Under the pieces are notes generated by a model. It was not told the DNA's origin. It did no database searches and saw nothing but the letters and a program-made list of their open reading frames with translations. A stretch of 64,000 nt of DNA. It comes from Mizuhopecten yessoensis. Taxonomy: Eukaryota. Position 1 is the stretch's first letter. Each line of letters opens with the position of its first letter. A program made the translations under genes and the position numbers. Shown here piece by piece: positions 5,553 to 35,600 of the stretch. The stretch lies in assembly GCF_002113885.1 (NCBI RefSeq), contig NW_018408315.1, positions 130,117 to 194,116 on the forward strand, in the 5' to 3' direction.

Positions 5553-5578
5553 ACATAAGATATCACAATACAGCTTCA

Positions 5579-11600: not shown

Positions 11601-14600
11601 TGTACCCAATAAAGCCTGGCACCTACCAACATACAAGAATATAGTATTACAACTGCATGTACCCAATAAAGCCTGGCACCTACAAACCTACAAGAATATA
11701 GTATTACAACTACATGTACACAATAAAGCCTGGCACCTACAAACATACAATAATATAGTATAGTATTACAACTACATGTACCCAACAAAGCCTGGAACCT
11801 ACCAACATACAAGAATATAGTATTACAACTGCATGTACCCAATAAAGCCTGGCACCTACAAACCTACAAGAATATAGTATTACAACTACATGTACCTAAT
11901 AAAGTCTTGCACCTACCAACATACAAGAATATAGTATTACAACTACATGTACCCAATAAAGCCTGGCACCTACAAACATACAAAAATATAGTATTACAAC
12001 TACATGTACCCAATAAAGTCTTGCACCTACCAACATACAAGAATATAGTATTACAACTACATGGTTGTACAAAACGAAGTTTCATGCCTACCAAAATACA
12101 GCAGTAGTGTTACAACTGAAGGCATGCATCAAGCAAAATCTTGCACCTATATCAAATTTCACTGATTATCAAATAAGTTGATTTTAGGAAAACTACAGTA
12201 AGTGAATTTTAGAATAATTTTACCATCAATAACATATATTAGAACTAATTTTCACCCTACAACGTATTTTAAATTTGTTGGTTTCAGGACAACCACATTA
12301 ACTAATTGTTATGCACGCATTTAAGAGCAGGGTTTTATTTTATGACCTGCCTATGTAACATATTACACACCATTTCACTTACCTGGTACATGTATATAAT
12401 CTGTGAATATACTCTTTGAAAATGAACCTGCCATATATTTCTACCTTAAACAAATTTAATACTCATGTAAACTAATAAATTCCAAACCTACGGAATCCTT
12501 GGTGTTGATGCTCCATCCTTTATCAAGTTGTTAAATTTAATACTCTTCAAAACTATATGCACCAAGTATATACCATAATGAATGTCAAATGGCAACTGAC
12601 ATTTGTACATGCTAGAAAATGTGATTTTTAAAATATTTGTAAACTATAGTAAGCTGTATGACTAAATCCTGGTAAAGATTGTCTAATCATCACATTTCCA
12701 AGGGAGCTAACTCTTCTAACTTTAGGATACTGAATTATCGTGAAAGAACACAATAACAAACTTGACATTCTTGTCTTTGAGTGCATCAGTAACGTTTGTG
12801 CTCTACCTGGAGATAACAGAGGAAGAAGTTGTATGAAAGTTCCGATCCATTTATAGCCCATATCAAACTTGATGCAGGAAAACTGATTTATTTGTACACA
12901 TTATGATATACATATATGTATTTTTGGAGAAAAAAATTATACTGTTTTTCAGAACAAAGGTTGAGTGTACCCTTATATTTAACCATGGAATGAGACAATG
13001 GTTAATTCTCTGTTGTTGATTGTGTAATTTTGGGTTTAAAAAAGCAGATCAATATACTGGACAAAATCATAATGCAAATTAACTTTTATTTGATAATATG
13101 GAAAGAGTTATATTGTCCATCTATTTACAATGTGTGTAGTTCATTTTAATGGAGAATCATACTTAAATTATCATAAGGAAGCAAAACTTAATCTATACCT
13201 TTAAGGAAACACAGTCCCAGGTACTGGTAAACAATTTTATACATTTCCTGATCGAATCAAATGTTAGTGCTGTTTATTCATTTCCTTAAATAAATTTCAT
13301 ATTTTAACTAAAAAACAATTATATCTTTATATGGGAGATGATAATTTCTACCAATAAATTTCAGACCTAAACTGCAGGTCTGTTGGATTTAGGAAAAAAG
13401 TCTATTTTTTACTGATCAACAGACCAAACTAAGAATGTAAAAAACCTTTTATCAAGAATTTATTAAAAAACACTTGTGATGGATTTTTCATGCAAAATTT
13501 CACCTACCGGTACTATATCCACTATGAAATCATTCTATGTCATATATTTCCTTACATTTTTATTTTACTACCTCGCATACAAATGTACCATACTAATGTC
13601 CTAACAAATGATCAGAAATACTGGATATGGACCGTTGCTTAAGAGTCGATAACTTTAGTTATTCTTTTAAAGGAAAGGTGATCTTTGAGATGCCAAAAAT
13701 TGAACTCACATAGAAAAAGATGTTTATGAACCTGTGTTTAAAATTTCAAGACAATCTGATAAGAAATGAAGTCTGTATATTAAGACAGAAACACCATATA
13801 TCTACATAGGGTTTGTACTGTACTCCATTTAACTGGTTCTTTCTGAACTCCTTTTGGTAGTATTGTCAAACCTGTAGTAAGAGACCACCCTAAGGAAGTC
13901 AAAAACACAGGTGGTCTCTTAACAGAGGTGGTCTCTTAACAGAGGTGGTCTCTTAACAGAGGTGGTCACGTGAGCATTTTTTACTGTATCTTTCTCTCAC
14001 AGGTAAGCTTGTTGCTGTAATGATGTGACCGAGTGAGGAGTCATGTTACTCTCACTTTAATATAGCCGTTAATCATCCCCATTGTCTCATGAAACTGTTG
14101 TCAACTGACGGTAACTTTTGAAAGGCCTCGTCATCTACCCATATCATCCTCGTATGACCTTAGTTGTTTGTGGACGCCCAATTTGACATCATCTTCATAA
14201 TTAGCTGTTGGGTGGCTCATATCTGTGGACACTAATGTCATCACATAACCCTTGCTGTTTGGTGGCCCATATTTGTGGACACTGGTTGTCATGTAACCCT
14301 AGTTGTTGGGTGGCTCATATCTGTGGACATTTGTCATCATGTAACTCTTGCTGTAGGGTGGTCCATATTTGTGGACACTGGTTGTCATGTAACCCTTGTT
14401 GTTGGGTGGCTCATATCTGTGGACACTTGTCATCACATAACCCTAGCTGTAGGGTGGCCCATATTTGTGGACACTGGTTGTCATGTAACCCTAGTTGTTG
14501 GGTGGCCCATATATGTGGACACTTGTCATCACATAACCCTAGCTGTAGGGTTGCGCATATTTGTGGACACTGGTTGTCATGTAAGCCTAGTTGTTGGGTG

Positions 14601-17600
14601 GCCCATATCTGTGGACACTTTCATCATGTAACCCTAGCTATTGGGTGGCCCATATTTGTGGACACTGGTTGTCATGTAACCCTAGTTGTTGGGTGGCCCA
14701 TATCTGTTGACACTTGTCGTCATGTAACCCTAGCTGTTGGGTGGCTCATATCTGTGGACACTTGTCGTCATGTAACCCTAGTTATTGAGTGGCCCGTATC
14801 TGTGGACACTGGTCGTCATGTAACCCTAGTTATTGGGTGGTTCATATCTGTGGACACTGGTTGTCATGTAACCCTAGTTATTGGGTGGCCCATATCTGTG
14901 GACACTTGTCGTCATGTAACCCTTGTTATTAGGTGGCCCATATATCTGTGGACACTTGTCGTCATGTAACCCTAGTTATTGAGTGGCCCATAACTGTGGA
15001 CACTGGTTGTCATGTAACCCTAGTTATTGGGTGGCCCATATCTGTGGACACTTGTCGTCATGTAACCCTAGTTATTGGGTGGTCCATATCTGTGGACACT
15101 GGTCATCATGTAACCCTAGTTATTGTGTCGTCCATATCTGTGGACACTTGTCGTCATGTAACCCTAGTTATTGTGTGGTCCATATCCGTGGACACTTGTC
15201 GTCATGAAACCCTAGTTATTGGGTGGTCCATATCTGTGGACACTTGTCGTCATGTAATCCTAGGTATTGGGTGGCCCATATCTGTGGACACTTGTCGTCA
15301 TGTAACCCTAGTTATTGGGTGGCCCATATCTGTGGACACTGGTTGTCATGTAACCCTAGCTGTTGGGTGGTCCATATCTGTGGACACTTGTTGTCATGTA
15401 ATCCTAGGTATTGGGTGGCCCATATCTGTGGACACTTGTCGTCATGTAACCCTAGTTATTGGGTGGCCCATTTCTGTGGACACTGGTTGTCATGTAACCC
15501 TAGCTGTTGGGTGGTCCATATCTGTGGACACTGGTCGTCATGTAACCCTAGTTATTGTGTGGTCCTTATCTGTGGACACTTGTCGTCATGTAACCCTAGT
15601 TATTGTGTGGTCCATATCTGTGGACACTTGTTGTCATGTAACCCTAGTTATTGGGTGGTCCATATCTTTGGACATTTGTTGTCATGTAACCCTAGTTATT
15701 GGGTGGGCCATATCTGTGGACACTTGTCGTCATGTAACCCTTGTTATTGGGTGGTCCATATCTGTGGACACTTGTCGTCATGTAACCCTAGTTATTGGGT
15801 GGCCCATATTTGTGGACACTTGTCGTCATGTTACCCTAGTTATTGAGTGGCCCATATCTGTGGACACTTGTCGTCATGTAACCCTAGTTATTGGGTGGTC
15901 CATATCTGTGGACACTTGTCGTCATGTAACCCTAGTTATTTGGTGGCCCATATCTGTGGACACTTGTCGTCATGTAACCCTTGTTATTGGGTGGTCCATA
16001 TCTGTGGACACTTGTCGTCATGTAACCCTAGTTATTGGGTGGCCCATATCTGTGGACACTTGTCGTCATGTAACCCTAGTTATTGGGTGGTCCATATCTG
16101 TGGACACTTGTCGTCATGTAACCCTAGTTATTGGGTGGTCCATATCTGTGGACACTTGTCGTCATGTAACCCTAGTTATTGGGTGGCCCATATCTGTGGA
16201 CACTTGTCGTCATGTAACCCTAGTTATTGGGTGGTCCATATCTGTGGACACTTGTCGTCATGTAACCCTAGTTATTGGGTGGTCCATATCTGTGGACACT
16301 TGTCGTCATGTAACCCTAGCTGTTGGGTGGTCCATATCTGTGGACACTGCATAGTCGTCATGTAACCCAGCTATTGGGTGGCCCATATATGTGGACACTG
16401 CATGGTTGTCATGTAACCCTAGCTGTTGGGTGGTCCATATTTGTGGACACTTGTCGTCATGTAACCCCGCTGTTGGGTGGCCTTATCATTAAAAACCATG
16501 TTGGAATATGACAATAGTTTTTGTGTTGCCATTTCAGCCATTGATTATATGACCTCAGCATCATGCATTTCCATATGACCTTATAGCTGATATGTGGCTT
16601 TATTGTATTTCAACATCATCATTTTGGCTTAGCTGGTAATTATTGTAAAGATTTACAACTTCTAGCTGTTAAAGCATTAAAAGTTCATATAAATCTAATA
16701 CATATTGACAGTAAAGATACTTATACTATAAATGATACTGCAATGTGTAGATTTCAGATATGTTCGCGGAATGACTTGCAGGTATTTTAGTTTTTAAACT
16801 TCGACAGTCCAAACGAACGCCCCTCAGAAATTTCTAGTGACAAATAAGTTAAAATATATAGATGCTATATATCACTGTACCATATGTTATATATGTTAAC
16901 TACCTTTATTGATTTGAGATTGTCATCTGTAGTACACGTATCATACATCTATAAATCTACAGTCGTATATCCTCGATCAACGCCACCATCTGTTACATCC
17001 ATCGCTGGCAATACTGTATAATACTCAGACAAAAAGGCTGTGACTTAGAAATCAATGAAATAGACTAGGTATGCAGACTTAAAGGGACATCACGTGAAAA
17101 GGCGTTTTTTTTTTAATGAATGTATGATTGTATGCACTTCCACTTATGTTACCTCGCTATCCCCATATCCATAGTCCGTTCCAAATGTCCAGTTTGACCA
17201 CTTGAATTGTTCGGGAAAGCCCTGCTAAAAATAGTGCCGATAACGTCACCTGACTAGGCAGTAAACACAAGTGGTGCGAGCGCGATGAAACGGTTTCCAA
17301 AGGGGCCCCCAGAGAGGGGCCGTAAGGCAACTGCAACTTCTTACCGCCCTATGAAACCAAGTTATATGATTTCTAAGTCCGTATTCAAACTTATTGAACA
17401 GTAAATATTCATCATTAGAAGTTAATTGCACACTTGCCAATATTTAGAATTTAAATTTATTTAGCTTTAAACATAAATTTGTTGCCAATAAAATTAAACA
17501 AGGGATGGGGCACAAGTTTTAACAATTTATCACAGTCTTCTCCCGTCATACATTTACAATTAAATGTCAACAATGATAATAGGCATAAACATAAAGTAGA

Positions 17601-20600
17601 TATATTTAAATATATATTGAATTTAGTACCGGAATGTGGCCGGTACAGATGGTAGGGGGCTAAACACCTTCCCTACACCAAGGGACAAACCTTTCTGATT
17701 TTTTTTTATATATTGCCGGGGCAGAGGAGGCCGGGTATTCATATTAGTACTAATTTAAATCTTGCATGTAAAAACAAAAATAATCGTTTAATTCAGCAAT
17801 ATAATTAAATCATACCATTTTATTGAACCCGGTAATATTATAAATTATGTAAATCCACGGACTTCGATAACACGTATCTCGGTGACCCAGAAAATACGCC
17901 GTGGGCCATCACAACAGTTATCCCTTGGAGGGCCTCATGGAAAAATCAAACTAACCAGTCACTTATCCCTTCCTTTCGCATAAACCACTGTATAATTATA
18001 GAAACACAAAGTAAACTCTCTCCAATACATGCCCATTAACATATTAAACTAAGTTCATCTGTGTTCAAACTCAGACAAAGATACTAGCGAGCTTAATAGT
18101 TTTAGATATTTATTCATAACATAAACAGCGCTAGCATTTCTGTCGATTCCATTTCAGCTTAACCGGCTATCCGGAAGAATACATGCACCGTACTAACTGC
18201 TACGGCAGTTATTTTCTCCTTTGAATACTGCCCACCTGCAATAATGATTCCGTAACGTACTCCTTGCGCTATCTTTTGACCATTTGGCAACTTTTCGTTT
18301 CGTATCTGACACGGTACAACACTTTTCTTTTGCTTACTTCACAAGGCCAGTCATTTTGTTTACAAAGAAATGGTGTGCTATGCGCTAGTAAAGGGAAATC
18401 CCTGAACAAAACGTTGGTCAGACAGGTAGAAATACCGATGATTTTCTTAGATTTAATCATTTTTATGAATCTATTTCAGCCAAATCCGATCGTTATTTTC
18501 CATAAGGAGTCTCACTTGATATGTTTATGTAGTATTTGAAAAAAAGACAAAAAATAAAGTTACTTCACCGTGATGCCCCTTTAAACCATGTTCATACTGC
18601 TAGTGTATATTGTCAAATCAATAGTAATTGGCAGTGTTGTTACTGAGGTAAATACAAATAAGTCAAAACTATTAAAATATTCTTTGGAATACAAGTGTCT
18701 TCACAGTTAGGTCAGTCCTCTTTTGTTGTAAATCACTTCAAACTTCTTACTCACGACTGTTTGATTTCACAATATGAAATGACGTCACATGGCATGACAT
18801 CACAATTGTTAGCTATGTCACACTTGAATCATGTCTTGTACATCAAGTTTTCTCCTGGTCATAGAACGTAAATCAGGTGTTATAGGTACAGATAATTAAA
18901 ACGGCTACTTCTTTACAGACTATGGGAGAAGTGAAACACATCTTAATCGTGAGATTCTGATTTATAGCAACACTATCTTGTAGAGTAAAACCACGGACTT
19001 AGATAACCTGATTCCGTGGTAAAACTGGTACATACTGTGTATCAAGTTTATTTCAAGTTTTATATTTGTTGTATTAACATGTGATGTAAATATACAACAG
19101 ATAGTTGTATCATTATGTGATACTGAATTCACAGTGCCATTCCATAATTATCTGGAAACGTTAATGTAAAATTATAGAGTTTTAGATACAGTATCTCAAA
19201 TATCCTACACTCTAACGGTTTTAACATCTATGTATCCTACACTCTATCAGTTTTAACCTCTATGTATCCTAACATCTATGTATCCTACACTCTAACGGTT
19301 TTAACACCTATGTATCCTACACTCTAACGGTTTTAACATCTATGTGTCCTACACTCTAACGGTTTTAACATCTATGTATCCTCCACTCTAACAGTTTTAA
19401 CATCTATGTATCCTACATTGTAACGGTTTTAACGTCTATGTATCCTACACTCTAACGGTTTTAACATCTCTGTATCCTACACTCTAACGGTTTTAACATC
19501 TATGTATCCTCCACTCTAACAGTTTTAACATCTATGTATCCTACATTGTCACGGTTTTAACATCTATGTATCCTACACTCTAACGGTTTTAACATCTATG
19601 TGTCCTACACTCTAACGGTTTTAACATCTATGTATCCTCCACTCTAACAGTTTTAACATCTATGTATCCTACATTGTCACGGTTTTAACATCTATGTATC
19701 CTACACTCTAACTGTTTTAACATCTATGTATCCTACACTCTAACGGATTTAACATCTATGTATCCTACACTGCATCCTACACTCTAACGGTTTTAACATC
19801 TATGTATCCTAACATCTATGTATCCTACACTCTAACGGTTTTAACACCTATGTATCCTACACTCTAACGGTTTTAACATCTATGTGTCCTACACTCTAAC
19901 GGTTTTAACATCTATGTATCCTAACATCTATGTATCCTACACTCTAACGGTTTTAACATCTATGTGTCCTACACTCTAACGGTTTTAACATCTATGTATC
20001 CTCCACTCTAACAGTTTTAACATCTATGTATCCTACACTCTAACGGTTTTAACATCTATGTGTCCTACACTCTAACGGTTTTAACATCTATGTATCCTCC
20101 ACTCTAACAGTTTTAACATCTATGTATCCTACATTGTAACGGTTTCAACATCTATGTATCCTACACTCTAACGGTTTTAACACCTATGTATCCTACACTC
20201 TAACGGTTTTAACATCTCTGTATCCTACACTCTAACGGTTTTAACATCTATGTGTCCTACACTCTAACGGTTTTAACATCTATGTATCCTCCACTCTAAC
20301 AGTTTTAACATCTATGTATCCTACACTCTAACGGTTTTAACACCTATGTATCCTACACTCTAACGGTTTTAACATCTATGTGTCCTACACTCTAACGGTT
20401 TTAACATCTATGTATCCTCCACTCTAACAGTTTTAACATCTATGTATCCTACATTGTAACGGTTTTAACATCTATGTATCCTACACTCTAACGGTTTTAA
20501 CATCTATGGTGACGTCAAGAAAGAACGAAATGATGATGCCACAAATTCAGGTAAAAGCAAAACTGGTTGAGTGATCCTTTGATCATTTTTCCAGTCTTGA

Positions 20601-23600
20601 TATTCAAAACTATACAATAGCTTGTCAATGCATTTGAGTTTACCATAGGATGAAAAGAACCTCAAACTTCTGTCCCCAATAACTGAAGGTGACATTTCAT
20701 AAAAATACAATATGTAATGGGATCTTGTTTGAAATCCTATGTATATTATGGAAATGACTCAGCAAGCTGTTTCAAATAACAAACTTTACACACATGACAT
20801 ACTTATTATATCAACCTAGCTGTACATTAAATTTTTGCTTCATTTTGAGATCAGTACGATTAAATAAATGATACATCAGAAAATACCTGTTAGTCACACT
20901 ACCTGATCAACTATATATATAGGTATTTTCCCATTTGCTTAAACATCTGTGTACAGATGAGATTTTCTATGTAGATATATAGGCCTAATTATCATATGTG
21001 TGTACTGATCGAGACAGACGGCTGAACCTACTAGGTAAATACAGTGTATGCATGACAGAAAATATTCATGTACAAATTATAAGCTATTTAAATCAGTGAG
21101 GATGGTACGTAAGGCGAGGTCAGAAAATCTGCCCACACATAGATTTCTCTTTTGATATTGCTAACATATATACCTGTACATGTGTTATGTCATATATAAA
21201 CGTTATATATACCTATGTATGTGGACATAAGTTTTATAGTCCTATAATTCGTACAGCATTTACAACAGAAAATATGACTGTGAAGACATTTGTATTCCAT
21301 CGTATTTTCTGTTGAATTATTTGTATTTACCTCAGTAACAACACTGCCATTTAAAATTGATATGACGATATAAAAATGCAACCCGATAGATTGATATAAA
21401 AAAAGTGCCATCACGACATGTATAATGTACAGGTGTGTATAACATATGTATGCTGGTACATATGGTACAGGGTAGTAGATGTCGCCCCTTATCTGTTAGT
21501 ATCTACAGCTTTCCAACACTTCTACAGTACTATTGATTCCAGACAAGTCAAAATGGAATATAACACCATAGTGAAAGCAGTGTTCATCATGCTATGAATG
21601 CATCATGCCAATTTGACAGAAGTATTTAACCTTTAGCTGCTGACTTTAACACTGAAGTGATCACTGAAACTTGACATACTTACGAGATAATTAAAATCTT
21701 TTAAGAGCATATGAAACAAACATATAAAATAAATTTCAGTGGAAACATGAAATGGAACTATATTGGTACCTTGTATTCATAAATGTCAATTATATTGAGA
21801 CACTGTTTAGGGAACCAGTACATCTAGTTGGCCCTGATGTTGGGTGTCAAACCCACGTTCACCACATCAATGGGTTTCAGATGCTGAGAAATGCTCCAAA
21901 TCTAAACCACACGGCAGAGCATGCTAGCTGTGATAAAGATACTGACCCTATATTTCATAGCAGTTCATTATCAGTGATAACGGAGATAAGAATTATCTAA
22001 CCATGAATGAATTGAGCAGTTATCTATATTTTATTCAGTTAACATACAAAATACATGTAACAGCAAAAATGATCAACCTATCTATTGCAAATAAGAATAA
22101 TACAATGAGTAGCAGAAAAAGATTTTTGTATTGTAAGTCTCTGGAGGATTTGACATACTGCATAGAGTATTTATTTCTATAAAGTTCTACATCTGTACAA
22201 TGACATATCCTGAACACACACACAACTTCTCACCACAGGAATAACAATTCTCATATTACTATAATTACAGTAAATTACACCCACAACCCTCCAACACTCA
22301 CAATCCTCCAACACCCACAACTCTCCAACACTCATAACCCTCCAGCACCCACAACACTCATGACCAGTACACACATTTTATGTAAATTACTTTCATATAC
22401 TACATGCACCTTAATGTTTTCCACACTTAAAGCTGCACCTTCTTTTCCAACACGTTTTTTCCTCAGTTTGTAATTTTTAGCCAAGATATGTTTCAACTAT
22501 AGATCAAAAGATGTTTGTGTAGAGGTATTGGGTATCCTTAAGAAAAAAATACTTTCCACAAAATGTAATTTAATACATATGCAATGCTTTTCTTTCAATG
22601 ATATGGCAATCTTCCATAACATTCAATAATTTCTATAGAACTTTTTTTGAAAACCAAAGTATTGCTGTGTACATGCATGTGCCTATTGTTCATTTAGGCC
22701 CTTCAGTAAATATCAACCTTTTCACATTATTACTGTGACTGCATTTTGTCCAATAGATCTAGTAAAAAGCAAACCAATTAAGTTCCATGTTAAATCCTAA
22801 TACTTATTTGATGATGATGTTGGAACTACAGTAAATCCTATATCCTGACCTAAACGAAAGCACCGACACCAATTTTCCCCAATATCACTCTAGGTTTTCT
22901 CACTTCCAACTCATTGGATAAACCTGCTAGGAGTTGGTTAACGTTTTTGGGTACCCACTAGTGGGTAACACACTGGACATGATGTTATCTGTCAAACTTA
23001 AAATTATCATGTCAAGTAAATAATAATGCTTTGTAACGTCATTTCCCGTTGTGACATCATAATTCATGGCAAATGTGTCCCCAATCGGAAAAAGGAATGA
23101 TTTATTTTCACTGGAGAAACATGGTTTTCTAGATATAATATCTAAACAATGATGGTTGATTATCATGTTTATTTAACTCACATTGGTTAATTTTCAAAGT
23201 TAAAGACACTTGGTAAACTTGTGTCAATATACAATTTGAAAATTAACAACTTATTCAAGTAAGTTAAACGTGACAACCAACCATCAATTGTTTGGGAACC
23301 TCTATATAACCATTCCAAATTAATGTCACATTATTTCTCCATTTACCTGATTTGTTTATATTTCAGGATATAATTTATGCGTAAGTATATTCTAGCTGTT
23401 TCATATTACAGGTATTTTTACTGTTTTGAGTGGATCTTTTAAGGGGTTCAATGTATACCTGTGAAAGAAATACTGTAATTTATACTTGTATTCAACACTT
23501 TATAAGCGCAGTATCAGTAGAAATTCTGCTATAACCTGCACAGCTGTAATACCGGGTAAACTAGATAAGGTAATGTTTTTGATTTTACACAAATATCACC

Positions 23601-26600
23601 TTACTATTAATAACTTGGTCAAAAAGTACTGTAACTTCTATAATATAGGTTGTTGTCTTGTTCAAGATTTTACATAGATAGATGAATGTACTGCATTACT
23701 CAAAACAAGACTTTTTAACTTACATTTTGACAGCTTATGGTGGTATATTTAATATACGCACTGCATGATTAAGGCATATATCCTGCTGAAGACTGACCAT
23801 AAGTTTAAAAAGTTTTGCTGTCACTTGATTCTGAGTAATAAAATATATTTATTTAACAATACAGTTGGTTTGTTTAAAAAAATCACAATTTATAAGCTAG
23901 ATAATTGCCTTGCAACAAAATAATCCTTTTAAAAGTAAATAAAACCGACTCCATCACATCAGCATCTTTCAGAAAATCCTAAATTACTTGTCAATCTTAA
24001 ACTAGGAATCATCATTCACAGCAATATGTATGATACATACTCATATATTTACATTCGCTCCCATTGAAGCTGTGTAAACCGTGACTGCGTATACATTACC
24101 GCATACGCAGTGAGATTCCTTGGAGACCATTGTTTCCTATTGATGACGTAATTTACATTGTGACGTCATAATGGTAACGTTGGAGATCCATCGCTGCTCG
24201 CAGGCTGTAGGCTGTTCATTTGTTTGGATTTACACAGGTTACGGAGGCTTTGTACCAATATAATACAATATTCAGTTTGACTGCGTATACGGTAGTATGA
24301 ACGCAGTCAAAATGAAGGTCAATCCTTAAATGCAACATCAAGCATGCCTCCACGCAACGTATCACGTACCATGCATGCTCACACAAATTATACATTTTCA
24401 CACACATCATCATACATTCTCAAGCACAATTAACATGCATGCTCACTTGCAATAAATGATAAAAAAATGCTGACTTACACACACCACAAATGCTCATGCA
24501 TACACACACCACACAAGCATGCACACACCGCTTATTCATGTATACATTGATATGCTAAACAAAAATACTTATACACACTGTACACACACTAGACATGCTT
24601 CCAACATCAGTATTATGCTTTCTCAGCTGTAAAAGCTAACTTAATTGCAACAACTCTAAAAAAAATCTGAAATGATCTAAAAGGATAAATAAATGCTATT
24701 AATACATCCCAAAGAATGTCTTCAAGCTATTAATCCATCTTCCCATGTAATAATTGGTCACCGTTAATCTCCACCTGTACTTTGGGCAATAATGGCTGCC
24801 ACAATTCCGATGATAATTGCAATGACTATGACTAATATTATGATGCATATGCACTTTTTCTTTCGAAACTTTTTCTGATTTTTCTCAGCTTCACCTAAGT
24901 CTTTCTTTCCTGATTCGATATCAGCCACAGTACGTTCCACATGATTTTCTATGGTATCAATTGTCTCCCCTTGGTCTGCCACTAACACATGCATTTCCTT
25001 AAATAGTTTGTTGACCTCATGAATCTGACCTTCAATGTCATGTAGAACTTCTTCGCGCTCCTGTAGAACTTGTAAATCTCCCTTAGCTTTTTGCATTTCC
25101 ATCAAGAATCCCCCAGTAAACATGGCCTGGTTTTGGAAATTCATGTCAATATTGTCTGGTTCATTCCCATTAGTTACAATCTGCATCTGACGTTTAAATC
25201 TTGCTTTTGTTTTATCCAAGTAATCTGCTTGATTTCCAGCAAAATCGTGAGTGGTCGTTTTCAGTTCCTGTGATAATCGGTCAATCTGAGTCACATGAAC
25301 TCTTTGATGTGTACCAGAAGTTATCAGGGATGCCTTTTGTGATTCTGTCGTTGTTTCAGCAGCTAATAACTCAATATCTTTTCGAATGCGTATTGAATCA
25401 GTCAGAATCTGGTCAGACATGTGTTCCATCTTCTGTAAGTCCTTCGAAGTTACAAATGGTGAACAATACAAATTACTTTGTAACTTTTTCACATCATCAG
25501 CCTCTTTCTTTAAGCTTTTTAGTCTTTCTTCAATACCGTGGACTTTATCTTGGAATCCTGCTATTGTAGTTTCCATGGTTTCTTTTTCCTTTTTCTTGCG
25601 TTTCTTTTTCAAATCTTCACTTTCAAACTCTTCGTGTTTCTTTTTCATCTCCTGTAGCCTATCCTTGACCATGATGGACACTGCAGGTAAACACGATCCT
25701 TATATAGTCCAGGTGGTAAGTTGTATGTCACTTCTATACTTGGAGCGATGCGTAATGATATCAGGCCATTACCTGGATCCACCTGTTGTTTCGGTTATCT
25801 GCAGTATTACCTGGTAAGTTGTCGGAAATTGATAGGAGAATTGTAGACAAACAGAAGTGAGTACACCTCGCTGATGACTGTATCGGTGACTCCTTATTGT
25901 AGTAATCAGCCAGAATTAGACATGAGAACACACTTGGGCTTTTCCCTACATGTCTGACCAGACTAGTAGTTGTAACACAAGTATATATATACTCCAGGCA
26001 AACTTACACTGAGTCACAGCAGTTGAGGCCCCAGGTGGGGAAATTAATCTCGCTTCAATGAGTTCAAATTATAATCTTGTAAATAAATCCAAGCTGTAGT
26101 AAATTTCCTTAAAAAACTATTATCCAGCAGAGGAAGTATGACAATGGCCTGACCTAACAATAACACAAGCCTGTACAGATGTCTGCATGGCGCTACCTCA
26201 CACTTATAAGGAGAGCTATATACTAAGCCCTGAGTACATCAACATGTCACTATCACATGTCTCTGTATATCAGAACACACTTGAGCTTTAGGTACATTGA
26301 TATGTATGCATACATATATTTATGTATACAACTGTGTCAACGAGGGATAAATTATCAATGGCAAACTGTATTGTGATACTTTAGTACTAACTAAGGCACA
26401 GGTATGTCCTAGAAAGGGACCATATGCTATATGTACATTTGTACATCTCCTTTTCCAAAATAGATAATCTACAAAAACGAATGCCTAGTTCAAACACTAG
26501 CTAGTACCTATATGACAGCTAAAATAAAAACTCAGGTATAGGGAGAACCAAAACTCAGGTATAAGGAGATTGTTTTTTTCTAAGTAAATTCAACCTTGAA

Positions 26601-29600
26601 ATCATGTTGTTGCAAGCTTTTCAAACAATTACACCAACCTGTACCTCATGTTTTAACTAGGTATTTTGTATTTGCTGTAGTCTAAAGCTTATAATTAATC
26701 TTAAAGCACAAGTTCTGTCACACCTACAGGTACAGGTAGACGATTTTATATGAGGCCAACAGGTAAAGATTTTGAAAGGTGCCTCAGGTGTATACATTTA
26801 CAACATCAAGTCCCATTCAGTTCCTCTACACTGTATTGTGTGTGTGTTTGTAAGGAAATACCTTCAACACAATCTGAAAACATCAAATATTTCGTGCTTG
26901 AGTGAGCACGAATTGCGAGGTCCTCCATAGGAGGAATCAGAGATAAATATTGCGATGTCGACAATCTAGGAGATATTGAAAACACTTGTGACTTATAGTA
27001 TATACTATGTACAGAAAACAGATAAATTAATTAAATTTTATTAATTATAAGCAGATTTCATTTGCATGCCATTGTACATGTTCTTTAATTTATGTCAAAA
27101 ACTTCTTTTTCATATTTTTCCAAAATTTTACAATATATAGAAATGTTAATCATGACCATGCAGTTATGATCAATCCCTATAATTAATGTTATATAGTTGT
27201 ACTGATGATGCTTTGGTAATACTTGTCCAGGAAATGTATAGAGTAGCACCCTCGTCAGATTTACAGTATTTATAGATCTTCTTTCACCAGTAAAAACCCA
27301 TAAGTCATTGATGAGTTTTTCACACTTTTTAAAACTCATCTTTTGAATCATATAGTCCCACATCTTAAACCTGTTTGAATCCATTTGTGTCCTCTTCTTT
27401 CAGTCTTTTATGAATATATTGCGAGGTAATAAATCAGGTTATATTATACATCGTTGATCTAAAACAATTTATAATAACAACAAGAGATCCCAGAGGGATC
27501 TTGGCGCCCACCTTTGTACCATCTCCATTAGTTCTTTGTCAGTTCTATCTTTTCTCTTCTTTCCTCTAATCTGTTTGATAGAGTCATGTCAACAGTAAAT
27601 GCACCTTGAGGTAACTTTTGATCTAAACTTAATACTGATGTGTATGAAAGCCAACCTTCAAAGTGAGTTTGTCATTTCACATATTTACTAGTTCAGTACT
27701 TAATGTGAAAGAAATAGAATCGATCATTGCAATATGAGAAAGATCTGTTTAGTTCTTTAAATCCATTTTGTTTTTATGATCAGTCTCAAAATATAACATG
27801 CACAACGAGGGATCAAGTGGAAGCTAAATTTAAAATTTGAGAAAGATCCCTCCCGTACTTTCCGAGAAATAGCAATAACAAATTTTCACTATCAAAATCC
27901 AAGATGGCTGCCTGTCGGCCATGTTGTTTATCCGATCAGTCTCTAAAATTGCCCTGCACAGCTAGGACCAAGGGGAACCTACATATCAAATTTAAGAAAG
28001 ATCCCTCTAGTTCCTACACTATCAAAACCCTAGATGGCTGCCTGTCGGCCATGTTGTTTATACGATCAGTCTCAAAAGTTGCCCTGCACATCCAAGGGCC
28101 AAGGGGAACCTATATATAAAAATTTGAGAAAGATCCCTCTGATGCTTCCCGAGAAATAGCGATAACAAACTTTCAATATCAAAATCAAAGATGGCTGCCT
28201 GTCAGCCATGTTGTTTATCCGATAAGTCTCAAAAAAAATGCCCTGCACAGCTAAGGACCAAGGGGAACCTACAAATAAAATTTGAGAAAGATCCCTTTTG
28301 TACTTCTTGAGAAATATCGATAACAAACTTTCACTATCAAAATCCAATATTGCTGCCTGTCGGCCATGTTGTTTATCCGATCAGTCTCAAACAAAAATTG
28401 CCCTGCACAGCTATAAGGATCAAGGGGAACCTACATATCAAATTTGAGAAAGATCCCTCTGGTGCTTCTTGAGAAATAGCCATAACAAAGTTTCAATATC
28501 AAAATCCAAGATGGCTGCCTGTCGGCCATGTTGTTTATACGATCAGTCTCAAAAGTTGCCCTGCACAGCTTAGGACCAAGGGAAACCTACATACAAAATT
28601 TGAGAAAGATCCCTCCGGTACTTCTGGAGAAATAGCGAGAACAAGAATTGTTTAAGGAAGGACGACGGACCACGGATGTAGGGTGATTTGAATAGCCCAC
28701 CATCAGATGATGGTTGGCTAAAAATGTACTTATGTACATCATACATTATTACTGTATGTGATAGATTGTGTTTCTATATTGCTATTATTGAGGAATTAAA
28801 TATCAGTAAATGTAAATAAAATGCAATAGTATTATGGTGAGACAAGAAAATATTACACAGGCTACCAGCCCCCAACTCTTGATGAAGAATATTTTTCATA
28901 AAATAGAGAGGGGATGGTGGCCTGCAATTATCTCCCCCTAATTTGAGAACTCAAGAATGAGATGTCCGAGTGATCAAAATTATAAGAGCCAATGTTTTCT
29001 AAATAATTTAATATTCTAGGGCTAAGTGGTCTAAATACATTGTAAATTCATTTAAATTTAAAATGTCTTGTGTCTTCTAAATACAGAACAAAGAACATTC
29101 TTCCTAATGCAATATAAAGGATCTTTGTTTCATTTTTATATAAGATTTTTATGAAACTCAACCTGAAGATTTGTTTTAGCTAGACTGATCCAACATTGAG
29201 ACCTAGCTAATTCATTAATCTGATAAACAAGAGGCCCAGAGAGCCTGTATCGCTCACCTGAATATGTTTATAACAATTGGTATGAAGTAAAGTTATAGCA
29301 CTCCATGGTAGGTGCTGTAAGTACATATGAAATTTCAGAAAGATCCATCAAGTACTTGAGATATAGCGATAACAAACTTCAAACAGATCGCCCCACCCCT
29401 ATGCCCCTAGGGGGGGGGTTATACCCACCATATATACAAAATTGAGTTCCCTTGGCCCAAGGATTCTCCAGACTAAATTAGGATAAAATCCCTTAATCCC
29501 GATGGTCGAAGAAGGATTTTAATGGTTTTACCTCTATTTCTCCTATTGGGCCCCGCCCTTCTGCCCCCTGGGAGACCACACCCCCTGCTTATACAAATTT

Positions 29601-32600
29601 GAGTCCCCTTAATTGGCCCAAGGATGCTACAGACCAAATAAGGATAAACACACCGTTTATATAAAATTGGTTCTTCTTCATACCAAATTTGGATAAAATC
29701 CTGTCATTCGTACGCAAGCAGAAGGTATTTGAAGAATTTGCTATGTTTCCCCTATTGGGCCCTGCCCTTCTGCCCCAAGGGGGCCACACTCACTGTTTAT
29801 ACAAACTTGAGTCCCTTTTACCAAAGATCCTCTAGACCAAATTGGGAAGAAATCCCTTCATCCCTATGGAAGAAGAAGGATTTTAAAGGTTTACCTCTAT
29901 TTCCCTTATTGGGCCACGCCCTTCTGCCCCCCTGGAGACCACTCTCACTGCTTATACAAATTTGAGTACCCTTGGCCCAAGGATGCTCCACACCAAATAT
30001 GGAACAAATCCTTTCATTCCTAAAGAAGAAGAAGGATTTTAAAGAATTTGCTATATTTCCTACATTGGACCCTGCCCCTCAGCCACAGGGGGGCCAGACC
30101 CACGGTTTATACAAAATTGGTTCCCCTTTACCCAATGAGGATCCAAACAATATATGGACCAAATCCTTTCATTCCTACAGAAGATGAAGGATTTTAAAGA
30201 ATTTGCTATATTCCCCCTATAAGGCCCCATCCCTCAGCCCCTAGGGGGCCTGACCCACTGTTTTATACAACAACGGTTCCCTTTTACCCAAGGATGATCC
30301 ACACCAAATATGGACCAAATCCTGTCATTCCTACAGAAGAAGAAGTATTTTAAAGAAGAATTTGCTATATTTCCCCTATTGGGCTCCCCCCCCCCCCCCT
30401 CAGCCCCCAGGGGGGCCAGACCCACCATTTATACAAAATTTAGTCCCCTCGGCCTAAGGATGCTCCAGACCAAATTTAGTCCAAATCTACTGGGCCGTTC
30501 AGGACAAGTAGCATTTTAAAGGAAAAGATGACGGACGATGAACGACGGATGCTGCGGTATGGCATAAGCTCACCATGGTCCTTCAGACTTACTCTTAATT
30601 CATATTCATAGGACGACCAAGTGAGTTCAGTGTGATGAGAAATTCAGATACGTAGCTATAGAGCCAAAAATATGTGTAACCTCAGGTGAGGGGTCTGAGC
30701 CCCCAGTGGGTCCAGGACAGGACCCTGGTGGGGGAGATTCAGTGTTGCCAATCCCCCAAAACAGAAAATGATTTTGTTTTCAAACATGAAAATTATCAAG
30801 GAGGGTTATCATAAAGATATATTTTAAGTGCCCAGTCAGCTTAAATGAAGTAAATCAAATACATATGTAACTAATATTTATTATTAATTAAGTTCCATAC
30901 ACCATAGATGACTTGTATACATCCATTCATTACACCATAAATGATTTGTATACATCCATTCGTTACACCATAGATGGTTTGTATACATCCATTCATTACA
31001 CCATAGATGATTTGTATCACATTTACAATTCATTTATTAAGTGCATGTAGTGGAACTGGACTGGGTCAATCGCCAGCGACCAGGTAGCTCAATTTGCAGA
31101 GCGTCGACAGTCTAGAGTTCAGAGGTCCTGGGTTCAAATCACTGGACCATAGCACATTTCGTTTCCTATTGCATGCATTTTACGTAATTCAAGATACCTG
31201 ACTGGTAGACATCATACACACAGTAAATAAGGATACTTGTGAAAATGTGCATAATGGACTGTATGTATATTTGTTGCTTAATACCCCGGTCACACATTAA
31301 CAGACGGTCTTGCCGGATCCACTAAATAGAAATTCACGGATGACCCTGGAAAAATCTATATCAGTGGTCCGCTACGGATGCAGTACGGTTTGACTACAGA
31401 TAGGGGGTAGTTGACAACTGTTCGGTGCGGTTTAGTACGGAATGACACGTGTCATGGTGTATGCACTGCAGATTAACAACGGTTCGCTACAATTTTAGTA
31501 CAGATTAGGACGAATAGTCTGGCACGGATTAGCACGAATAGTCTGGCACGGATTAGTATGAACTCGCACGGAGTGCCACGAACCTGCCACGGTAAGCAAT
31601 CCGTCTTCAAACTCCTGCGCTCGCGTGTTCATTCCACAACTTAATTCAAATCTTAGTACGGGTTAGTACAAGTATGTAGTTCACCGTAGCTAACCATACC
31701 GAGGCCGGGGATCTACTACGGATCAGTAAGGATGTACTACAGTTGTCTGATCGGTGGTAAATTTTTGAACATGTTAAGGAATTGTCACATATACAAATAC
31801 TACTATGAATGACCAAGGATACAATACGGACCACTGCTGATTGCCACGAATGATGCCGGATCGTATCCATGGCTAATCCAGCGGCGCATCCGTGAATGTG
31901 TGACTGGGACATTAATATCATTACCATGTTTATATATAATATCAACGTAAATGTCCTGATTTCATTTTTCACGAAAAAAGGGTTTCTATATTGCAGTTCT
32001 AGTGTAGTAATATAAACACACGTGACTCTTTCCAGACCAGCTTATTAAAAAGTGCACGCTGAGATACAGAAAGCAAACCATAAGTTCATCTTTATTTGAC
32101 CAATGATTTCAAAAACACGTCTCTCGATCAGGATACAACTCAATGTTGTGTGTCTTTACTTAATTTATTTTTTTAATATGATTTAGAATTGTTCAATCAA
32201 CCTCTCTATCAGAATATGGAAGAGGTGGTGAAAGTCAGTTATTTCGGAAAAAGATAGACTTGATATTCTGTCCCAGAGAAAGTGTAATGGCCAGAGGGTA
32301 AGAGTTCAAAAATAACAATTTGTGATAGTGTTTTCACTATTTTAACATTAACATTTCTGGTATGCTACCTTCTTTACTAGAACATTTTCTGCCTCAAAAA
32401 AAACCCTGTGCAAATGACACAAGTAATTACATCACTATATCAAAGATTTTAAATCTTACATTATGGAAGAAATTGACTTATATTAGTTTCACATGTCTTT
32501 GGGGAGCTCAATCCTTAATGATTAAACTTGATATTTAGTTTGCCACAGGGGTCCTTCAAGAGAGCTTAATCCTTAATGATCAAACTTGATATTTAGTTTG

Positions 32601-35600
32601 CCACAGGGGTCCTTCAAGAGAGCTCAATCCTTAACTGACTGTATTTGACTTAGTTTGACATGTCTTTGGGAAGCTCAAGATGCTTGCAATTTAGTGACAG
32701 GTATATTAAACTGTCAAATTACTTAACTTTAAACTTAAAATAAGTGTGATAAAACAAACAGTTTGTAAGTTGCTCCGTATGAGTTCCATTCTTTCATATA
32801 ATTAAAAAAAATCATATCTTATTAAAGTATTCATCGAACTGTATCAAACAACTAGCATTTACAAAGAAACAAAGATTATTCTCTAGACCTTATATGTATT
32901 TTTTATGACTTCCTCAATAAAAACATATCTCCTTTTGACAATCTATTACAGCCACTTGGTAAAGCATGGCAACATTAAGGCACATAATAGCAGAAAACAA
33001 CAGATTTTACAAACTGAAGTGACTGACAAACATGGCAAATACAGCATTTTAAATTCTTATCACACAATAGTTTATGTTACTTGTAATAATTGCCAACCTC
33101 TAAGCCACTTAAAGAGCCCACTATGTGTGAGATCTTCCCCCACCGGGTATAAGTAGGTAGCCCAATATGTGGGAGATCTTCCCCAACCAGGTATAAGTAA
33201 GGAGCCCAATATGTGGGAGATCTTCCCCCACCAGGTATAAGTAAGGAGCCCAATATGTGTGAGATCTTCCCCCACCGGGTATAAGTAGGGAGCGCAATAT
33301 GTGGGAGCTCTTCCCCCACCGGGTATAAGTAGGTAGCCCAGTATGTGGGAGCTCTTCCCCCACCGGGTATAAGTAAGGAGCCGAATATGTGGAAGATCTT
33401 TCCCCACCGGGTATAAGTAAGGAGCCCAATGTGTGGGAGATCTTCCCCCACCAGGTATAAGTAAGTTGCCCAATATGTGTGAGATCTTCCCCCACCGGAT
33501 ATAAGTAGGGAGCGCAATATGTGGGAGCTCTTCCCCCACCGGGTATAAGTAAGGAGCCGAATATGTGAGAGATCTTCCCCCACCTGGTATAAGTAGGTAG
33601 CCCAATATGTGGGAGATCTCCCCCCACCGGGTATAAGTAAGGAGCCCAATATGTGGGAGATTTTCCCCAACCGGGTATAAGTAAGGATCCCATTGTGTGG
33701 GAGATCTACCCCCACCAGGTATAAGTAAGGAGCCCAATATGTGGGAGATTTTCCCCAACCGGGTATAAGTAAGGAGCCCAATATGTGGGAGATTTTCCCC
33801 AACCGGGTATAAGTAAGGAGCCGAATATGTGGAAGATCTTCCCCCACCGGGTATAAGTAAGGAGCCCAATATGTGAGAGATCTTCCCCCACCGGGTATAA
33901 GTAAGGAGCCCAATATGCGGGAGATATTCCCCCACCGGGTATAAGTAGGTAGCCCAATATGTGGGAGATGTAATAATTGCCAACCTCTAAGCCACTTAAA
34001 GAGCCCACTATGTGTGAGATCTTCCCCCACCGGGAATAAGTAGGTAGCCCAATATGTGAGAGATCTTCCCCCACCGGGGATAAGTAAGGAGCCGAATATG
34101 TGAGAGATCTTCCCCCGCCGGGTATAAGTAAGGAGCCCAATTTGTGGGAGATCTTCCCCCACCGGGTATAAGAAAGGAGCCCAATATGTGGGGGATCTTC
34201 CCCCACCGGGTATAAGTAATGAGCCCAATATGTGGGAGATCTTCCTCCTCCGGGTATAAGTAAGGAGCCCAATTTGTGGGAGATCTTCCCCCACAGTGTA
34301 TAAGTAAGGAGCCCAATTTGTGGGAGATCTTCCCCCACCGGATATAAGTAAGGAGCCCAATTTGTGGGAGATCTTCCCCCACCAGGTATAAGTACGGAGC
34401 CCAATATGTGGGAGATCTTCCTCCTCCGGGTATAAGTAAGGAGCCGCATATGTGGAAGATCTTCCCCCACCGGGTATATGTAAGGAGCCCAATATGTGTG
34501 AGATCTTCCCCCACCGGGTATATGTAAGGAGCCCAATATGTGAGAGACCTTCCCCCACCTGGTATAAGTAAGGAGCCCAATATGCGGGAGATATTCCCCC
34601 ACCGGGTATAAGAAAGGAGCCCAGTATGTGGGAGATCTTCCCCCACAGTGTATAAGTAAGGAGCCCAATTTGTGGGAGATCTTCCCCCACAGTGTATAAG
34701 TAAGGAGCCCAATTTGTGGGAGATCTTCCCCCACCAGGTATAAGTAAGGAGCCCAATTTGTGGGAGATCTTCCCCCACCAGGTATAAGTAAGGAGCCCAA
34801 TAGGTGAGAGATCTTCCCCCACCTGGTATAAGTAAGGAGCCCAATATGTGGGAGATCTTCCCCCACCGGGTATAAGTAAGGAGCCCATTTCTTGAGATCT
34901 GATTTACAAATCAATCAAACAGATCAACTTGATTTCAAGAAATCAAAGTAGTAATGGATGTAAAATCAAAGAAAAGTAAATTTAAACCAAGACCAAGTTT
35001 GTTTTTATACCAGATTTATCAATTATAAAGAATGATTGCGTCATCTGAATAAGGTATTTATTTAAAAAAAAGAAAATTACTGACTGCCTAACATTTTTTG
35101 ATATTCTTTTAAATTAAAGTTTCCATTTATTGACTGCGTCACTGAATCCAGTTGTAAAAAAAAGTTGCTACCGAAAATAAGTTACAGTGGCTTAATATTG
35201 ATTGCTGACAGGTTGCTTTCCAAGTTGAAATGCACATACTAGCTGACCCTTGGAGAGGTTATTCAGTGCCTAGTGTAAAGAACCAATGAGTATATCAATC
35301 CTTGTATGATTAGCCAAATTGTGGATGACTTACCTCCCTTGGGCCACTGGCCAAGCTAACATTTCCCTTGCCATCATATTTGATGGGAGCCCCGCCCATC
35401 TCTATCAATGTTCCATAGCCAGTGGGAGTAAAGAAGGCAGGGATACCTGCCCCTCCTGCTCTTATCCTCTCTGCTAGAGTTCCCTACAATGTAATTAATA
35501 TAACTATAACAGAACTTCCAGACAGCATTCTCAATACAAACATAATGTTTATGTTGTTTCATTGTAGTGAACAGTTTTGAAGACAATTAACAAACTAAAG

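What the first reader, a model, noticed from the sequence alone, without database searches (positions are those of the whole stretch)
24764..25690. Same-strand nested intronless syntaxin inside OXCT1 intron 5
Seen: an intact 302-aa Qa-SNARE with N-peptide, Q-layer and TM anchor, in the same orientation as the host gene, with an acceptor (tttacctgcag) 8 nt before the ATG. Splicing OXCT1 exon 5 onto it is out of frame ([11 protein letters not shown]), so no fusion protein arises. It needs its own 5' exon (candidate donor GTAAGT near 26003-26007), or it acts as an alternative terminal exon that truncates OXCT1. Known: nested genes are more often antisense; vertebrate STX11/STX19 are single-coding-exon but lack a TM domain, whereas STX1-4 have a TM domain and many introns. 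Inference: a divergent, possibly retroposed syntaxin whose polyadenylation (candidate AATAAA at 23848-23853) competes with host splicing.
Basis: partly seen in the sequence, partly recalled or inferred. Interest (0 to 1): 0.7.

Follow-up and report, generated by a model that had tools for sequence, protein, structure and literature searches.

The report
Single-exon syntaxin nested in OXCT1 intron
An intact, conserved, one-exon membrane-fusion gene (a syntaxin) sits inside an intron of a scallop ketone-metabolism gene, is transcribed on its own without splicing, and has kept this address in several bivalve lineages: a tidy but fairly ordinary nested gene.

Summary
On the minus strand, 25672-24764 is an uninterrupted 302-codon ORF for a complete syntaxin (Qa-SNARE). 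It has an N-peptide, an Habc bundle, a SNARE motif with the central glutamine, a polybasic stretch and a transmembrane anchor. It lies in the 24.2-kb intron between the OXCT1-like exons ending ...GPRE and starting VRDF..., on the host's strand.

The mechanistic reading mostly fails. Transcriptome-sized contig sets from four studies are colinear with the genome from about 26.1-26.3 kb to about 22.9 kb. None shows a joint at the acceptor-like site before the ATG or at the proposed GTAAGT donor. All run through the proposed AATAAA. The acceptor-like motif is absent in five relatives.

The gene is under strong purifying selection (dN/dS 0.04-0.10). The same intron and strand hold its orthologue in Mytilus and an unnamed bivalve; Tegillarca has it after the same exon, same strand.

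It belongs to a mollusc-specific syntaxin clade, separate from the multi-exon canonical syntaxin-1. The Haliotis member has one coding intron and lies just upstream of OXCT1. The linkage therefore predates the nesting, and retroposition from a distant locus is unlikely.

Verdict: a real gene, a new member of known kinds, of modest interest.

The parts
24764..25672 (-). Complete coding sequence of the nested syntaxin (302 codons plus TAA stop), with no intron
   Evidence: ORF list and sequence. Pfam SNARE and Syntaxin. Syntaxin-1A is the best solved relative. dN/dS is 0.098 against P0002/L011 and 0.043 against L013.
25643..25672 (-). N-peptide, [10 protein letters not shown] (residues 1-10). 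It corresponds to the Sec1/Munc18-binding N-peptide of syntaxin-1A.
   Evidence: Aligned from residue 3 with syntaxin-1A residue 2 (9ojz_G, 3c98_B). V2, D4, R5 and E8 are nearly invariant in 17 relatives. Binding itself was not tested.
25151..25567 (-). Habc three-helix bundle (residues 36-174)
   Evidence: Pfam PF00804 covers residues 36-174. The AlphaFold2 model has helices 3-70, 76-111 and 116-167. Foldseek matches the squid syntaxin Habc (1s94_B, TM 0.90, rmsd 1.9 A) and 1ez3_B (TM 0.82).
24887..25066 (-). SNARE core motif (residues 203-262), with the zero-layer glutamine Q234 at 24971-24973
   Evidence: Aligned to syntaxin-1A SNARE-complex fragments (1n7s_B, 5kj7_B; query 203-262). Q234 is invariant in alignment A1.
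24785..24853 (-). Transmembrane anchor (residues 274-296), preceded by the polybasic KKFRKKK
   Evidence: Read directly from the translation. The model shows a continuous helix over residues 187-299.
25673..26265 (-). Unspliced 5' leader and promoter-proximal region. In three runs the upstream contig ends lie at 25976/26172, 26136 and 26265. The main transcription start is probably near 25.96-26.0 kb.
   Evidence: Contig pieces. In X13 the depth falls from 31.5 to 4.3 at 25976-25992. The 301-nt leader of the related pectinid contig L011 aligns colinearly to 25947-25887. The start-site position is inferred, not shown.
25982..25990 (-). TATATATA, a TATA-box-like element next to the depth step
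   Evidence: Sequence and the depth step. Its function is inferred only.
22910..24763 (-). 3' untranslated region, at least 1.85 kb. The true 3' end is not determined.
   Evidence: Contigs of all four runs continue from the coding sequence to 22909-22913 at similar depth. No AWTAAA lies just upstream of 22910, so that end may be a repeat boundary.
25681..25691 (-). Acceptor-like tttacctgcag, 8 nt before the ATG. It is not used in the RNA contigs and is not conserved.
26002..26007 (-). RNA contigs read straight through it.
23848..23853 (-). It is present but read through.
35334..35483 (-). Host OXCT1-like exon 5 ([11 protein letters not shown]...GPRE), phase-0 donor gtaagt
11162..35333 (-). Host intron 5 (24,172 nt), which contains the syntaxin gene
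   Evidence: The flanking exons are contiguous in the protein (PRE|VRDF). No N runs.
11051..11161 (-). Host OXCT1-like exon 6 ([13 protein letters not shown]...)

Best explanation
This is a functional, independently transcribed, single-exon gene for a tail-anchored plasma-membrane-type syntaxin (Qa-SNARE). It lies in the sense orientation inside intron 5 of the scallop OXCT1-like gene. Its transcript starts at an internal promoter a few hundred bases upstream of the ATG, at about 25.96-26.27 kb. It is not spliced. It carries a 3'UTR of at least 1.85 kb and is translated from the conserved MVKDR start. By homology, the protein should bind a Sec1/Munc18 protein through its N-peptide and closed Habc-SNARE conformation. 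It should then assemble through its Q-layer SNARE motif with SNAP-25/23-like and VAMP-like partners to drive exocytic fusion. It belongs to a mollusc-specific syntaxin clade that is distinct from the canonical, multi-exon syntaxin-1 of the same genome. The nest is old. The same intron and strand hold the orthologue in Mytilus and an unnamed compact-genome bivalve; in Tegillarca it follows the same exon on the same strand, with exon 6 beyond the fetched locus. The linkage to OXCT1 is older still, because in Haliotis the clade member lies just upstream of OXCT1 on the same strand. Shown here: the gene's anatomy, its family, purifying selection, colinear RNA contigs, conserved nesting and tree position. 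Inferred: the binding partners, the exact start and end of the transcript, and how the host transcript passes through the nested gene's termination signals.
For: - **Domains and solved relatives:**
- **Conservation:** invariant Q234 and a family motif SNLYCSPFV.
- **Selection:** NG86 dN/dS is 0.098 (scallop against P0002), 0.043 (against L013) and 0.054 for the Mytilus-type pair.
- **Transcription:** contig sets of 54-269 Mb from four studies, against a 988-Mb genome, hold 94-100% of the sampled words of 23800-26100. They lay as fully colinear pieces: X1 24204-26136, X3 24204-26265, X13 24302-25976 plus 25992-26172, and X9 24303-27113. All continue down to about 22910. Three runs show zero depth upstream of about 26265.
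- **Relatives' transcripts:** no OXCT1 exon sequence appears in seven transcript-like contigs of relatives.
- **Same intron, same strand:**
  - Mytilus californianus L008 has exon 5 at 3160-3309, the syntaxin at 10001-10903 and exon 6 at 19260-19370.
  - Tegillarca L009 has exon 5 at 6007-6156 and the syntaxin at 10001-10900.
  - L019 has exons at 230-955 and the syntaxin at 4624-5619.
- **Tree:** in the careful tree the pteriomorph clade has support 98/97, the bivalve clade 99/98, the gastropod clade 99/99 and the mollusc clade 94/83. The canonical syntaxin-1 clade is separate at 95/84.
- **Haliotis:** the gene has two coding exons and ends 7.8 kb upstream of OXCT1.
- **Canonical syntaxin-1:** in the scallop it is spread over at least six exon matches across 25 kb on contig C123.
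Against: - The runs are only guessed to be RNA.
- Contigs carry no strand information, cannot fix transcript ends and drop rare isoforms. A minor spliced or chimeric form is therefore not excluded.
- One run (X9) extends to 27113, so upstream starts exist.
- No poly(A) signal sits just before the common contig end at about 22910.
- The leader contains upstream ATGs.
- The gastropod linkage rests on one species.
- The mollusc-wide clade has only moderate support (94/83).
- Partner binding and cellular location were not tested.
Confidence: 0.82

Rival explanations
1. Alternative terminal exon. OXCT1 exon 5 splices to the AG 8 nt before the ATG. This would give a truncated OXCT1 (…PRE + [11 protein letters not shown]) that ends at the syntaxin's poly(A) site, so the block would mainly down-regulate OXCT1.
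For: The motif tttacctgcag is present. Exon 5 ends in phase 0, so the predicted read-out is correct. A sense-nested gene driving intronic polyadenylation of its host is known at H13/Mcts2 (PMC13309782).
Against: There is no joint or loose end at 25681/2 in contigs of four runs, and the contigs run colinearly through it. The motif is absent in the five relatives examined. No OXCT1 sequence appears in the relatives' transcript-like contigs. This reading would not explain dN/dS of 0.04-0.10 on the syntaxin frame.
Confidence: 0.05
2. The syntaxin mRNA has its own spliced non-coding 5' exon. The donor would be the GTAAGT at 26002-26007 or another site, joined to the AG before the ATG.
For: Both consensus motifs exist about 320 nt apart. 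Contigs drop rare isoforms.
Against: Contigs of three runs cross both sites without a joint. The leader of the related pectinid contig L011 is colinear with 25947-25887, inside the would-be intron. The acceptor is not conserved.
Confidence: 0.08
3. A retrocopy that arrived from a distant multi-exon parent and landed by chance in a large intron, either neutral or recently recruited.
For: It has no intron. Related one-exon copies sit inside introns of unrelated genes: Mytilus P0059 lies antisense in a biotin-protein-ligase gene, and Mercenaria P0073 lies antisense in a PARP/VIT/VWA gene. This suggests that copies of the family have dispersed.
Against: The gene occupies the same intron and strand in at least two other bivalve lineages, and the same side of exon 5 in a third, and is under strong purifying selection. 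The own genome has only this copy and no close parent; the next hit is 37% identical over one exon. The gastropod relative is already adjacent to OXCT1 and has one intron. No poly(A) tract or target-site duplication was looked for; after more than 400 My none would be expected.
Confidence: 0.1
4. Assembly artefact: the block does not belong in this intron.
For: The assembly is fragmented, with 82,659 contigs.
Against: There are no N runs in the window. The same arrangement appears in chromosome-scale assemblies of Mytilus californianus and Tegillarca granosa, and in an independent contig, L019.
Confidence: 0.01

Closest known systems
Syntaxin-1A / canonical invertebrate syntaxin-1 (plasma-membrane Qa-SNAREs; group Qa.IV in the Kloepper classification, cited from my own knowledge)
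   Same: It has the same architecture: N-peptide, Habc, linker, SNARE motif with central Q, polybasic stretch and TM anchor. Syntaxin-1A gives the best sequence and fold matches.
   Different: It is only about 30% identical. It falls in a separate, mollusc-only clade. It has a single exon, whereas the scallop's canonical gene has at least six exon matches over 25 kb on contig C123. A family-specific motif, SNLYCSPFV, replaces the SAILASPNPDE region of syntaxin-1A.
Vertebrate STX11 and STX19
   Same: They are Qa-type syntaxins without coding introns.
   Different: They lack a TM anchor and are held by a cysteine-rich lipidated tail. This protein has a 23-residue TM helix. No orthology is shown.
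Cholinergic gene locus: VAChT inside the first intron of ChAT (e.g. PMC3053374)
   Same: An intronless gene is nested in the sense orientation in an intron of a host gene, and the arrangement is conserved over very long times.
   Different: There the two genes serve one pathway and share regulation and 5' exons. Here no functional link between a SNARE and a ketone-body enzyme is known, and no shared exon is seen.
H13/Mcts2 (PMC13309782) and mammalian host/nested pairs in general (PMC11694760)
   Same: An intronless gene is nested sense-to-sense in a host intron. This raises the question of transcriptional interference and intronic polyadenylation of the host.
   Different: Mcts2 is a young, imprinted mammalian retrogene with a demonstrated effect on its host. 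Here any effect on OXCT1 is untested, and the nest is hundreds of millions of years old.

Membership tests
Syntaxin / Qa-SNARE | N-terminal three-helix Habc domain | tested here: met
   PF00804 scores 41.6 bits against a cut-off of 26.7. The model's helices match squid and rat Habc at TM 0.90 and 0.82.
Syntaxin / Qa-SNARE | SNARE motif with glutamine at the zero layer | tested here: met
   PF05739 scores 63.4 bits. Q234 aligns with the Q of ...LVESQGEMIDRIE in syntaxin-1A and is invariant in 17 relatives.
Syntaxin / Qa-SNARE | C-terminal transmembrane anchor after a polybasic juxtamembrane stretch | tested here: met
   Residues 267-273 are KKFRKKK and residues 274-296 are all hydrophobic. The model shows a continuous helix to residue 299.
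Syntaxin / Qa-SNARE | N-peptide that binds a Sec1/Munc18 protein | tested here: inconclusive
   The motif MVKDRLQE aligns with the start of syntaxin-1A, and D4 and R5 are nearly invariant. Binding was not tested.
Canonical syntaxin-1 orthologue group | Groups with named syntaxin-1A sequences in a tree | tested here: not met
   It falls in a separate mollusc-only clade. The Schistosoma syntaxin-1A clade is distinct at 95/84. The scallop has a separate canonical gene on C123, 64-76% identical per exon to Schistosoma syntaxin-1A.
Same-strand nested (intronic) gene | The whole transcription unit lies inside one intron of a host gene on the same strand | tested here: met
   The coding sequence and the RNA contigs (about 22.9-26.3 kb) lie within intron 5 (11162-35333). 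Host and guest ORFs are both on the minus strand.
Same-strand nested (intronic) gene | Own promoter, with a transcript independent of the host | tested here: inconclusive
   Colinear contigs are bounded by zero depth upstream in three runs, and there is no host exon sequence. However, the runs are only presumed to be RNA, and contigs show neither strand nor ends.
Retrogene | Intronless copy of an intron-bearing parent located elsewhere | tested here: inconclusive
   It is intronless. No close parent exists in the genome. The gastropod relative has one coding intron and is already next to OXCT1.
Retrogene | Poly(A) remnant and target-site duplications | not tested
   These are not expected to survive, given that the nest is shared by Pectinida, Mytilida and Arcida.

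The most novel reading that the evidence does not exclude
The syntaxin and OXCT1 may form an ancient, selectively maintained gene pair in molluscs: a tandem neighbour in a gastropod, a sense-nested guest in pteriomorph bivalves. On this reading, transcription of one gene gates the other, for example through promoter occlusion or intronic polyadenylation. That would couple a secretory SNARE to ketone-body use, and the nest would have arisen by a local rearrangement that moved the guest across five host exons without changing strand.
Probability: 0.12. Interest if true: 0.55.

Novelty: new member of a known kind. Interest (0 to 1): 0.35.

Why it matters
This is a clean, datable example of a sense-oriented, protein-coding guest gene that has stayed in the same host intron across three bivalve orders. 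A gastropod state shows the two genes as neighbours before the nesting. That makes it a usable natural case for two questions: how a host transcript tolerates a guest's termination signals, and how nests arise. It also flags a mollusc-specific, mostly intronless syntaxin clade whose copies repeatedly sit inside introns of other genes and whose cell biology is unknown. None of this overturns current understanding. Automated annotation already calls the Mytilus orthologues 'syntaxin-like'.

Tried and rejected
- **Acceptor before the ATG:** rejected as a functional site. There is no joint in four runs and it is not conserved.
- **GTAAGT at 26002-26007:** rejected as a donor, because contigs read through it.
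- **AATAAA at 23848-23853:** rejected as the main poly(A) signal, because contigs read through it. The hexamer is at chance frequency.
- **Relics of duplicated OXCT1 exons 1-5 downstream of the guest:** these might have been left by a duplication model of nest origin. None was found.
- **USP24/USP9X-like gene:** this gene lies head-to-head with the syntaxin in Haliotis. It is not in the window. The scallop homologue of its first exon is on another contig, C76576, so linkage cannot be judged in this fragmented assembly.
- **OXCT1 exons around the mytilid paralogue (L020-L022):** none lies within 10 kb. That paralogue lies in a biotin-protein-ligase gene instead.
- **Literature:** searches for an intronless bivalve syntaxin, a nested gene in OXCT1, or a mollusc Qa-SNARE phylogeny found nothing relevant.
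- **Own record:** The look-up of encoding contigs returned nothing for the window's own protein.
- **Host gene handling:** it was examined exon by exon only.
Full report
**What is there**

The window is G000:C4988:130117-194116 of a 988-Mb, 82,659-contig assembly. By its relatives it is a pectinid bivalve.

On the minus strand an ATG at 25672 opens a 302-codon frame that ends with a stop at 24766-24764. Pfam finds a SNARE domain (1.9e-17) and a Syntaxin N-terminal domain (1.5e-10), both above the curated cut-offs. The best solved relatives are syntaxin-1A chains (E 5e-21 to 7e-20), aligned over residues 3-274 at about 30% identity.

The zero-layer glutamine is Q234, in [14 protein letters not shown]. 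It aligns with the Q of syntaxin-1A and is invariant in 17 relatives. The N-terminal MVKDRLQE aligns with the syntaxin-1A N-peptide, and D4 and R5 are nearly invariant. Residues 274-296 form a 23-residue hydrophobic anchor after KKFRKKK.

An AlphaFold2 model (mean pLDDT 70) has helices 3-70, 76-111 and 116-167, a disordered linker, and one long helix over residues 187-299.

**The host**

CoA_trans (PF01144) exon matches lie on the same strand on both sides of the gene. The upstream exon (35483-35334) ends ...GPRE followed by gtaagt, in phase 0. The next exon (11161-11051) begins VRDF. These two are contiguous in succinyl-CoA:3-ketoacid CoA transferases, so a single 24,172-nt intron holds the syntaxin.

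The window has no N runs. The host was examined exon by exon only; I built and searched no joined spliced model.

**How it is expressed**

Twenty public runs from eight studies hold 85-100% of the sampled words of 23800-26100. Fourteen of these have contig sets of only 55-390 Mb, far below the genome size, and the tool guesses that they are RNA.

I laid contigs from four runs, one from each of four studies, on 23000-28999. The pieces are fully colinear with the genome:

| Run | Pieces over the gene |
|---|---|
| X1 | 24204-26136 |
| X3 | 24204-26265 |
| X13 | 24302-25976, then 25992-26172 |
| X9 | 24303-27113 |

- In all four runs, further pieces overlap by k-1 bases and carry the transcript down to 22909-22913.
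- These records have no unaligned overhang.
- No joint is reported anywhere between 23000 and 27113.
- Three runs have zero depth from about 26265 to 27400, which argues against host pre-mRNA or genomic DNA as the source.

The acceptor-like tttacctgcag (25691-25681), the GTAAGT (26007-26002) and the AATAAA (23853-23848) are therefore all crossed by the dominant RNA form.

In X13 the depth steps from 31.5 to 4.3 at 25976-25992, beside a TATATATA at 25990-25982. The 301-nt leader of a related pectinid's contig (L011) aligns colinearly to 25947-25887. I infer a main start near 25.96-26.0 kb, with minor upstream starts.

The 3' end is not fixed. No AWTAAA lies just before 22910, so that common contig end may be a repeat boundary.

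Caveats: the runs are only presumed to be RNA, and contigs give no strand, no ends and no rare isoforms.

**The acceptor-like motif is not conserved**

Upstream of the ATG, the second pectinid, two mytilids, Tegillarca and the L019 species lack it. None of seven transcript-like contigs from relatives contains OXCT1 exon sequence.

**Selection**

Nei-Gojobori dN/dS values are as follows:

| Comparison | dN/dS | Note |
|---|---|---|
| Scallop against P0002 (L011) | 0.098 | dN 0.123, dS 1.26 |
| Scallop against L013 | 0.043 | 234 codons |
| Two Mytilus-type orthologues | 0.054 | |

dS is near saturation, so the ratios are rough, but the direction is unambiguous.

**Conservation of the nest**

- *Mytilus californianus*: the 300-aa one-exon orthologue (XP_052106577.1, 'syntaxin-like', 54% identity) lies at L008 10001-10903. 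It sits between OXCT1 exon 5 (3160-3309) and exon 6 (19260-19370), all on one strand and inside a 525-aa CoA_trans gene model.
- *Tegillarca granosa*: the orthologue (L009 10001-10900) follows exon 5 (6007-6156) on the same strand. A second intronless copy lies 8.4 kb further on.
- An unnamed bivalve with short introns (L019): exons 3-5 lie at 230-955 and the syntaxin at 4624-5619, on the same strand.

The scallop genome has only this one copy.

**Family and origin**

An exhaustive HMMER pass over 1.84 billion representatives gave 5,037 hits at E<=0.001 but only 11 at E<=1e-30.

In a careful maximum-likelihood tree of 49 sequences rooted on syntaxin-7-like proteins:
- All OXCT1-nested genes fall in a pteriomorph clade (UFBoot/SH-aLRT 98/97).
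- That clade lies within a bivalve clade (99/98) that also holds a *Mercenaria* protein.
- Beside it stand a gastropod clade (Haliotis, Patella, Batillaria; 99/99) and a chiton sequence.
- Together these form a mollusc-only clade (94/83), separate from the clade holding Schistosoma syntaxin-1A (95/84).

The scallop's canonical syntaxin-1 is a different gene. It has at least six exon matches over 25 kb on contig C123, 64-76% identical per exon to Schistosoma syntaxin-1A.

The *Haliotis cracherodii* member (XP_071117011.1) has two coding exons (L027 10001-10282 and 13584-14189). It ends 7.8 kb upstream of the start of a 519-aa CoA_trans gene on the same strand. Chance adjacency of these two particular genes is of the order of one in ten thousand (my estimate). 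I therefore infer that the linkage predates the gastropod-bivalve split and that the nesting is a later, local event. This rests on one gastropod.

Other one-exon members sit inside other genes' introns. The Mytilus 'syntaxin-3-like' paralogue lies antisense in a biotin-protein-ligase gene. The Mercenaria member lies antisense in a PARP/VIT/VWA gene. Copies of this family have therefore dispersed, by a mechanism not determined here.

**Verdict on the interpretation**

- The 'alternative terminal exon' and 'own spliced 5' exon' readings are not supported.
- 'Divergent' is right.
- 'Retroposed' is unproven and weakened.
- Competition between the guest's polyadenylation and host splicing is a fair question, with a precedent at H13/Mcts2 (PMC13309782), but it is untested here.
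- Same-orientation nesting is not in itself unusual. In mouse and human the two orientations are 'broadly similar' (PMC11694760).
- I found no paper describing this gene or the nest.

**Novelty and score**

This is a new member of known kinds: a lineage-specific Qa-SNARE paralogue and a conserved sense-nested gene. It is already picked up by automated annotation in Mytilus. The long-conserved nest and the neighbour-to-guest transition are a modest curiosity. Interest is 0.35.

Noticed in passing
window 27400-28800: A high-copy repeat inside host intron 5. Summed RNA-contig depth runs from hundreds to more than 100,000, with many internal joints. It is probably an expressed transposon family.
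   Followed up: no
window 42702-43400 (-): A 232-aa ORF that is a reverse-transcriptase fragment (PF00078, E 4.7e-26), upstream of the OXCT1 exons found.
   Followed up: partly
window 54001-58000: A stretch with raised G+C (0.45-0.49) and a very strong GC skew (+0.54 to +0.71). Unexplained.
   Followed up: no
window 24082-24111 and 24278-24307: Two 30-nt direct repeats 196 nt apart in the syntaxin 3'UTR; the first copy is an imperfect palindrome (TGACTGCGTATAC...GCATACGCAGT). RNA contigs break and depth rises here. It looks like a small inserted repeat element.
   Followed up: partly
L013 nt 143/144: The contig of a close pectinid relative (89% aa identity) has a 1-nt insertion relative to the scallop coding sequence, which breaks the frame near codon 62. 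It could be an assembly error or a real lesion in that sample.
   Followed up: partly
L009 18414-19300 (Tegillarca granosa): A second intronless syntaxin of the same family lies 8.4 kb downstream of the first on the same strand. It is a tandem duplicate, apparently in the same host intron.
   Followed up: partly
L023 10001-10867 (Mytilus californianus): A 288-aa one-exon paralogue ('syntaxin-3-like') lies antisense inside an 837-aa biotin-protein-ligase gene. This paralogue group is widespread in mytilid-type contigs from metagenomes.
   Followed up: partly
L026 10001-10915 (Mercenaria mercenaria): A 304-aa one-exon member of the bivalve clade lies antisense inside a 3164-aa PARP/VIT/VWA gene.
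   Followed up: no
L027 7006-7332 (-) (Haliotis cracherodii): The first coding exon of a 2599-aa USP24/USP9X-like gene lies head-to-head 2.7 kb from the syntaxin start, which may be a bidirectional promoter. The scallop homologue of that exon is on another contig (C76576).
   Followed up: partly
G000:C123:168254-168370 and 168798-168911: The scallop's canonical syntaxin-1 has two adjacent matches to the same protein segment (residues about 122-160). This looks like a pair of mutually exclusive exons.
   Followed up: no
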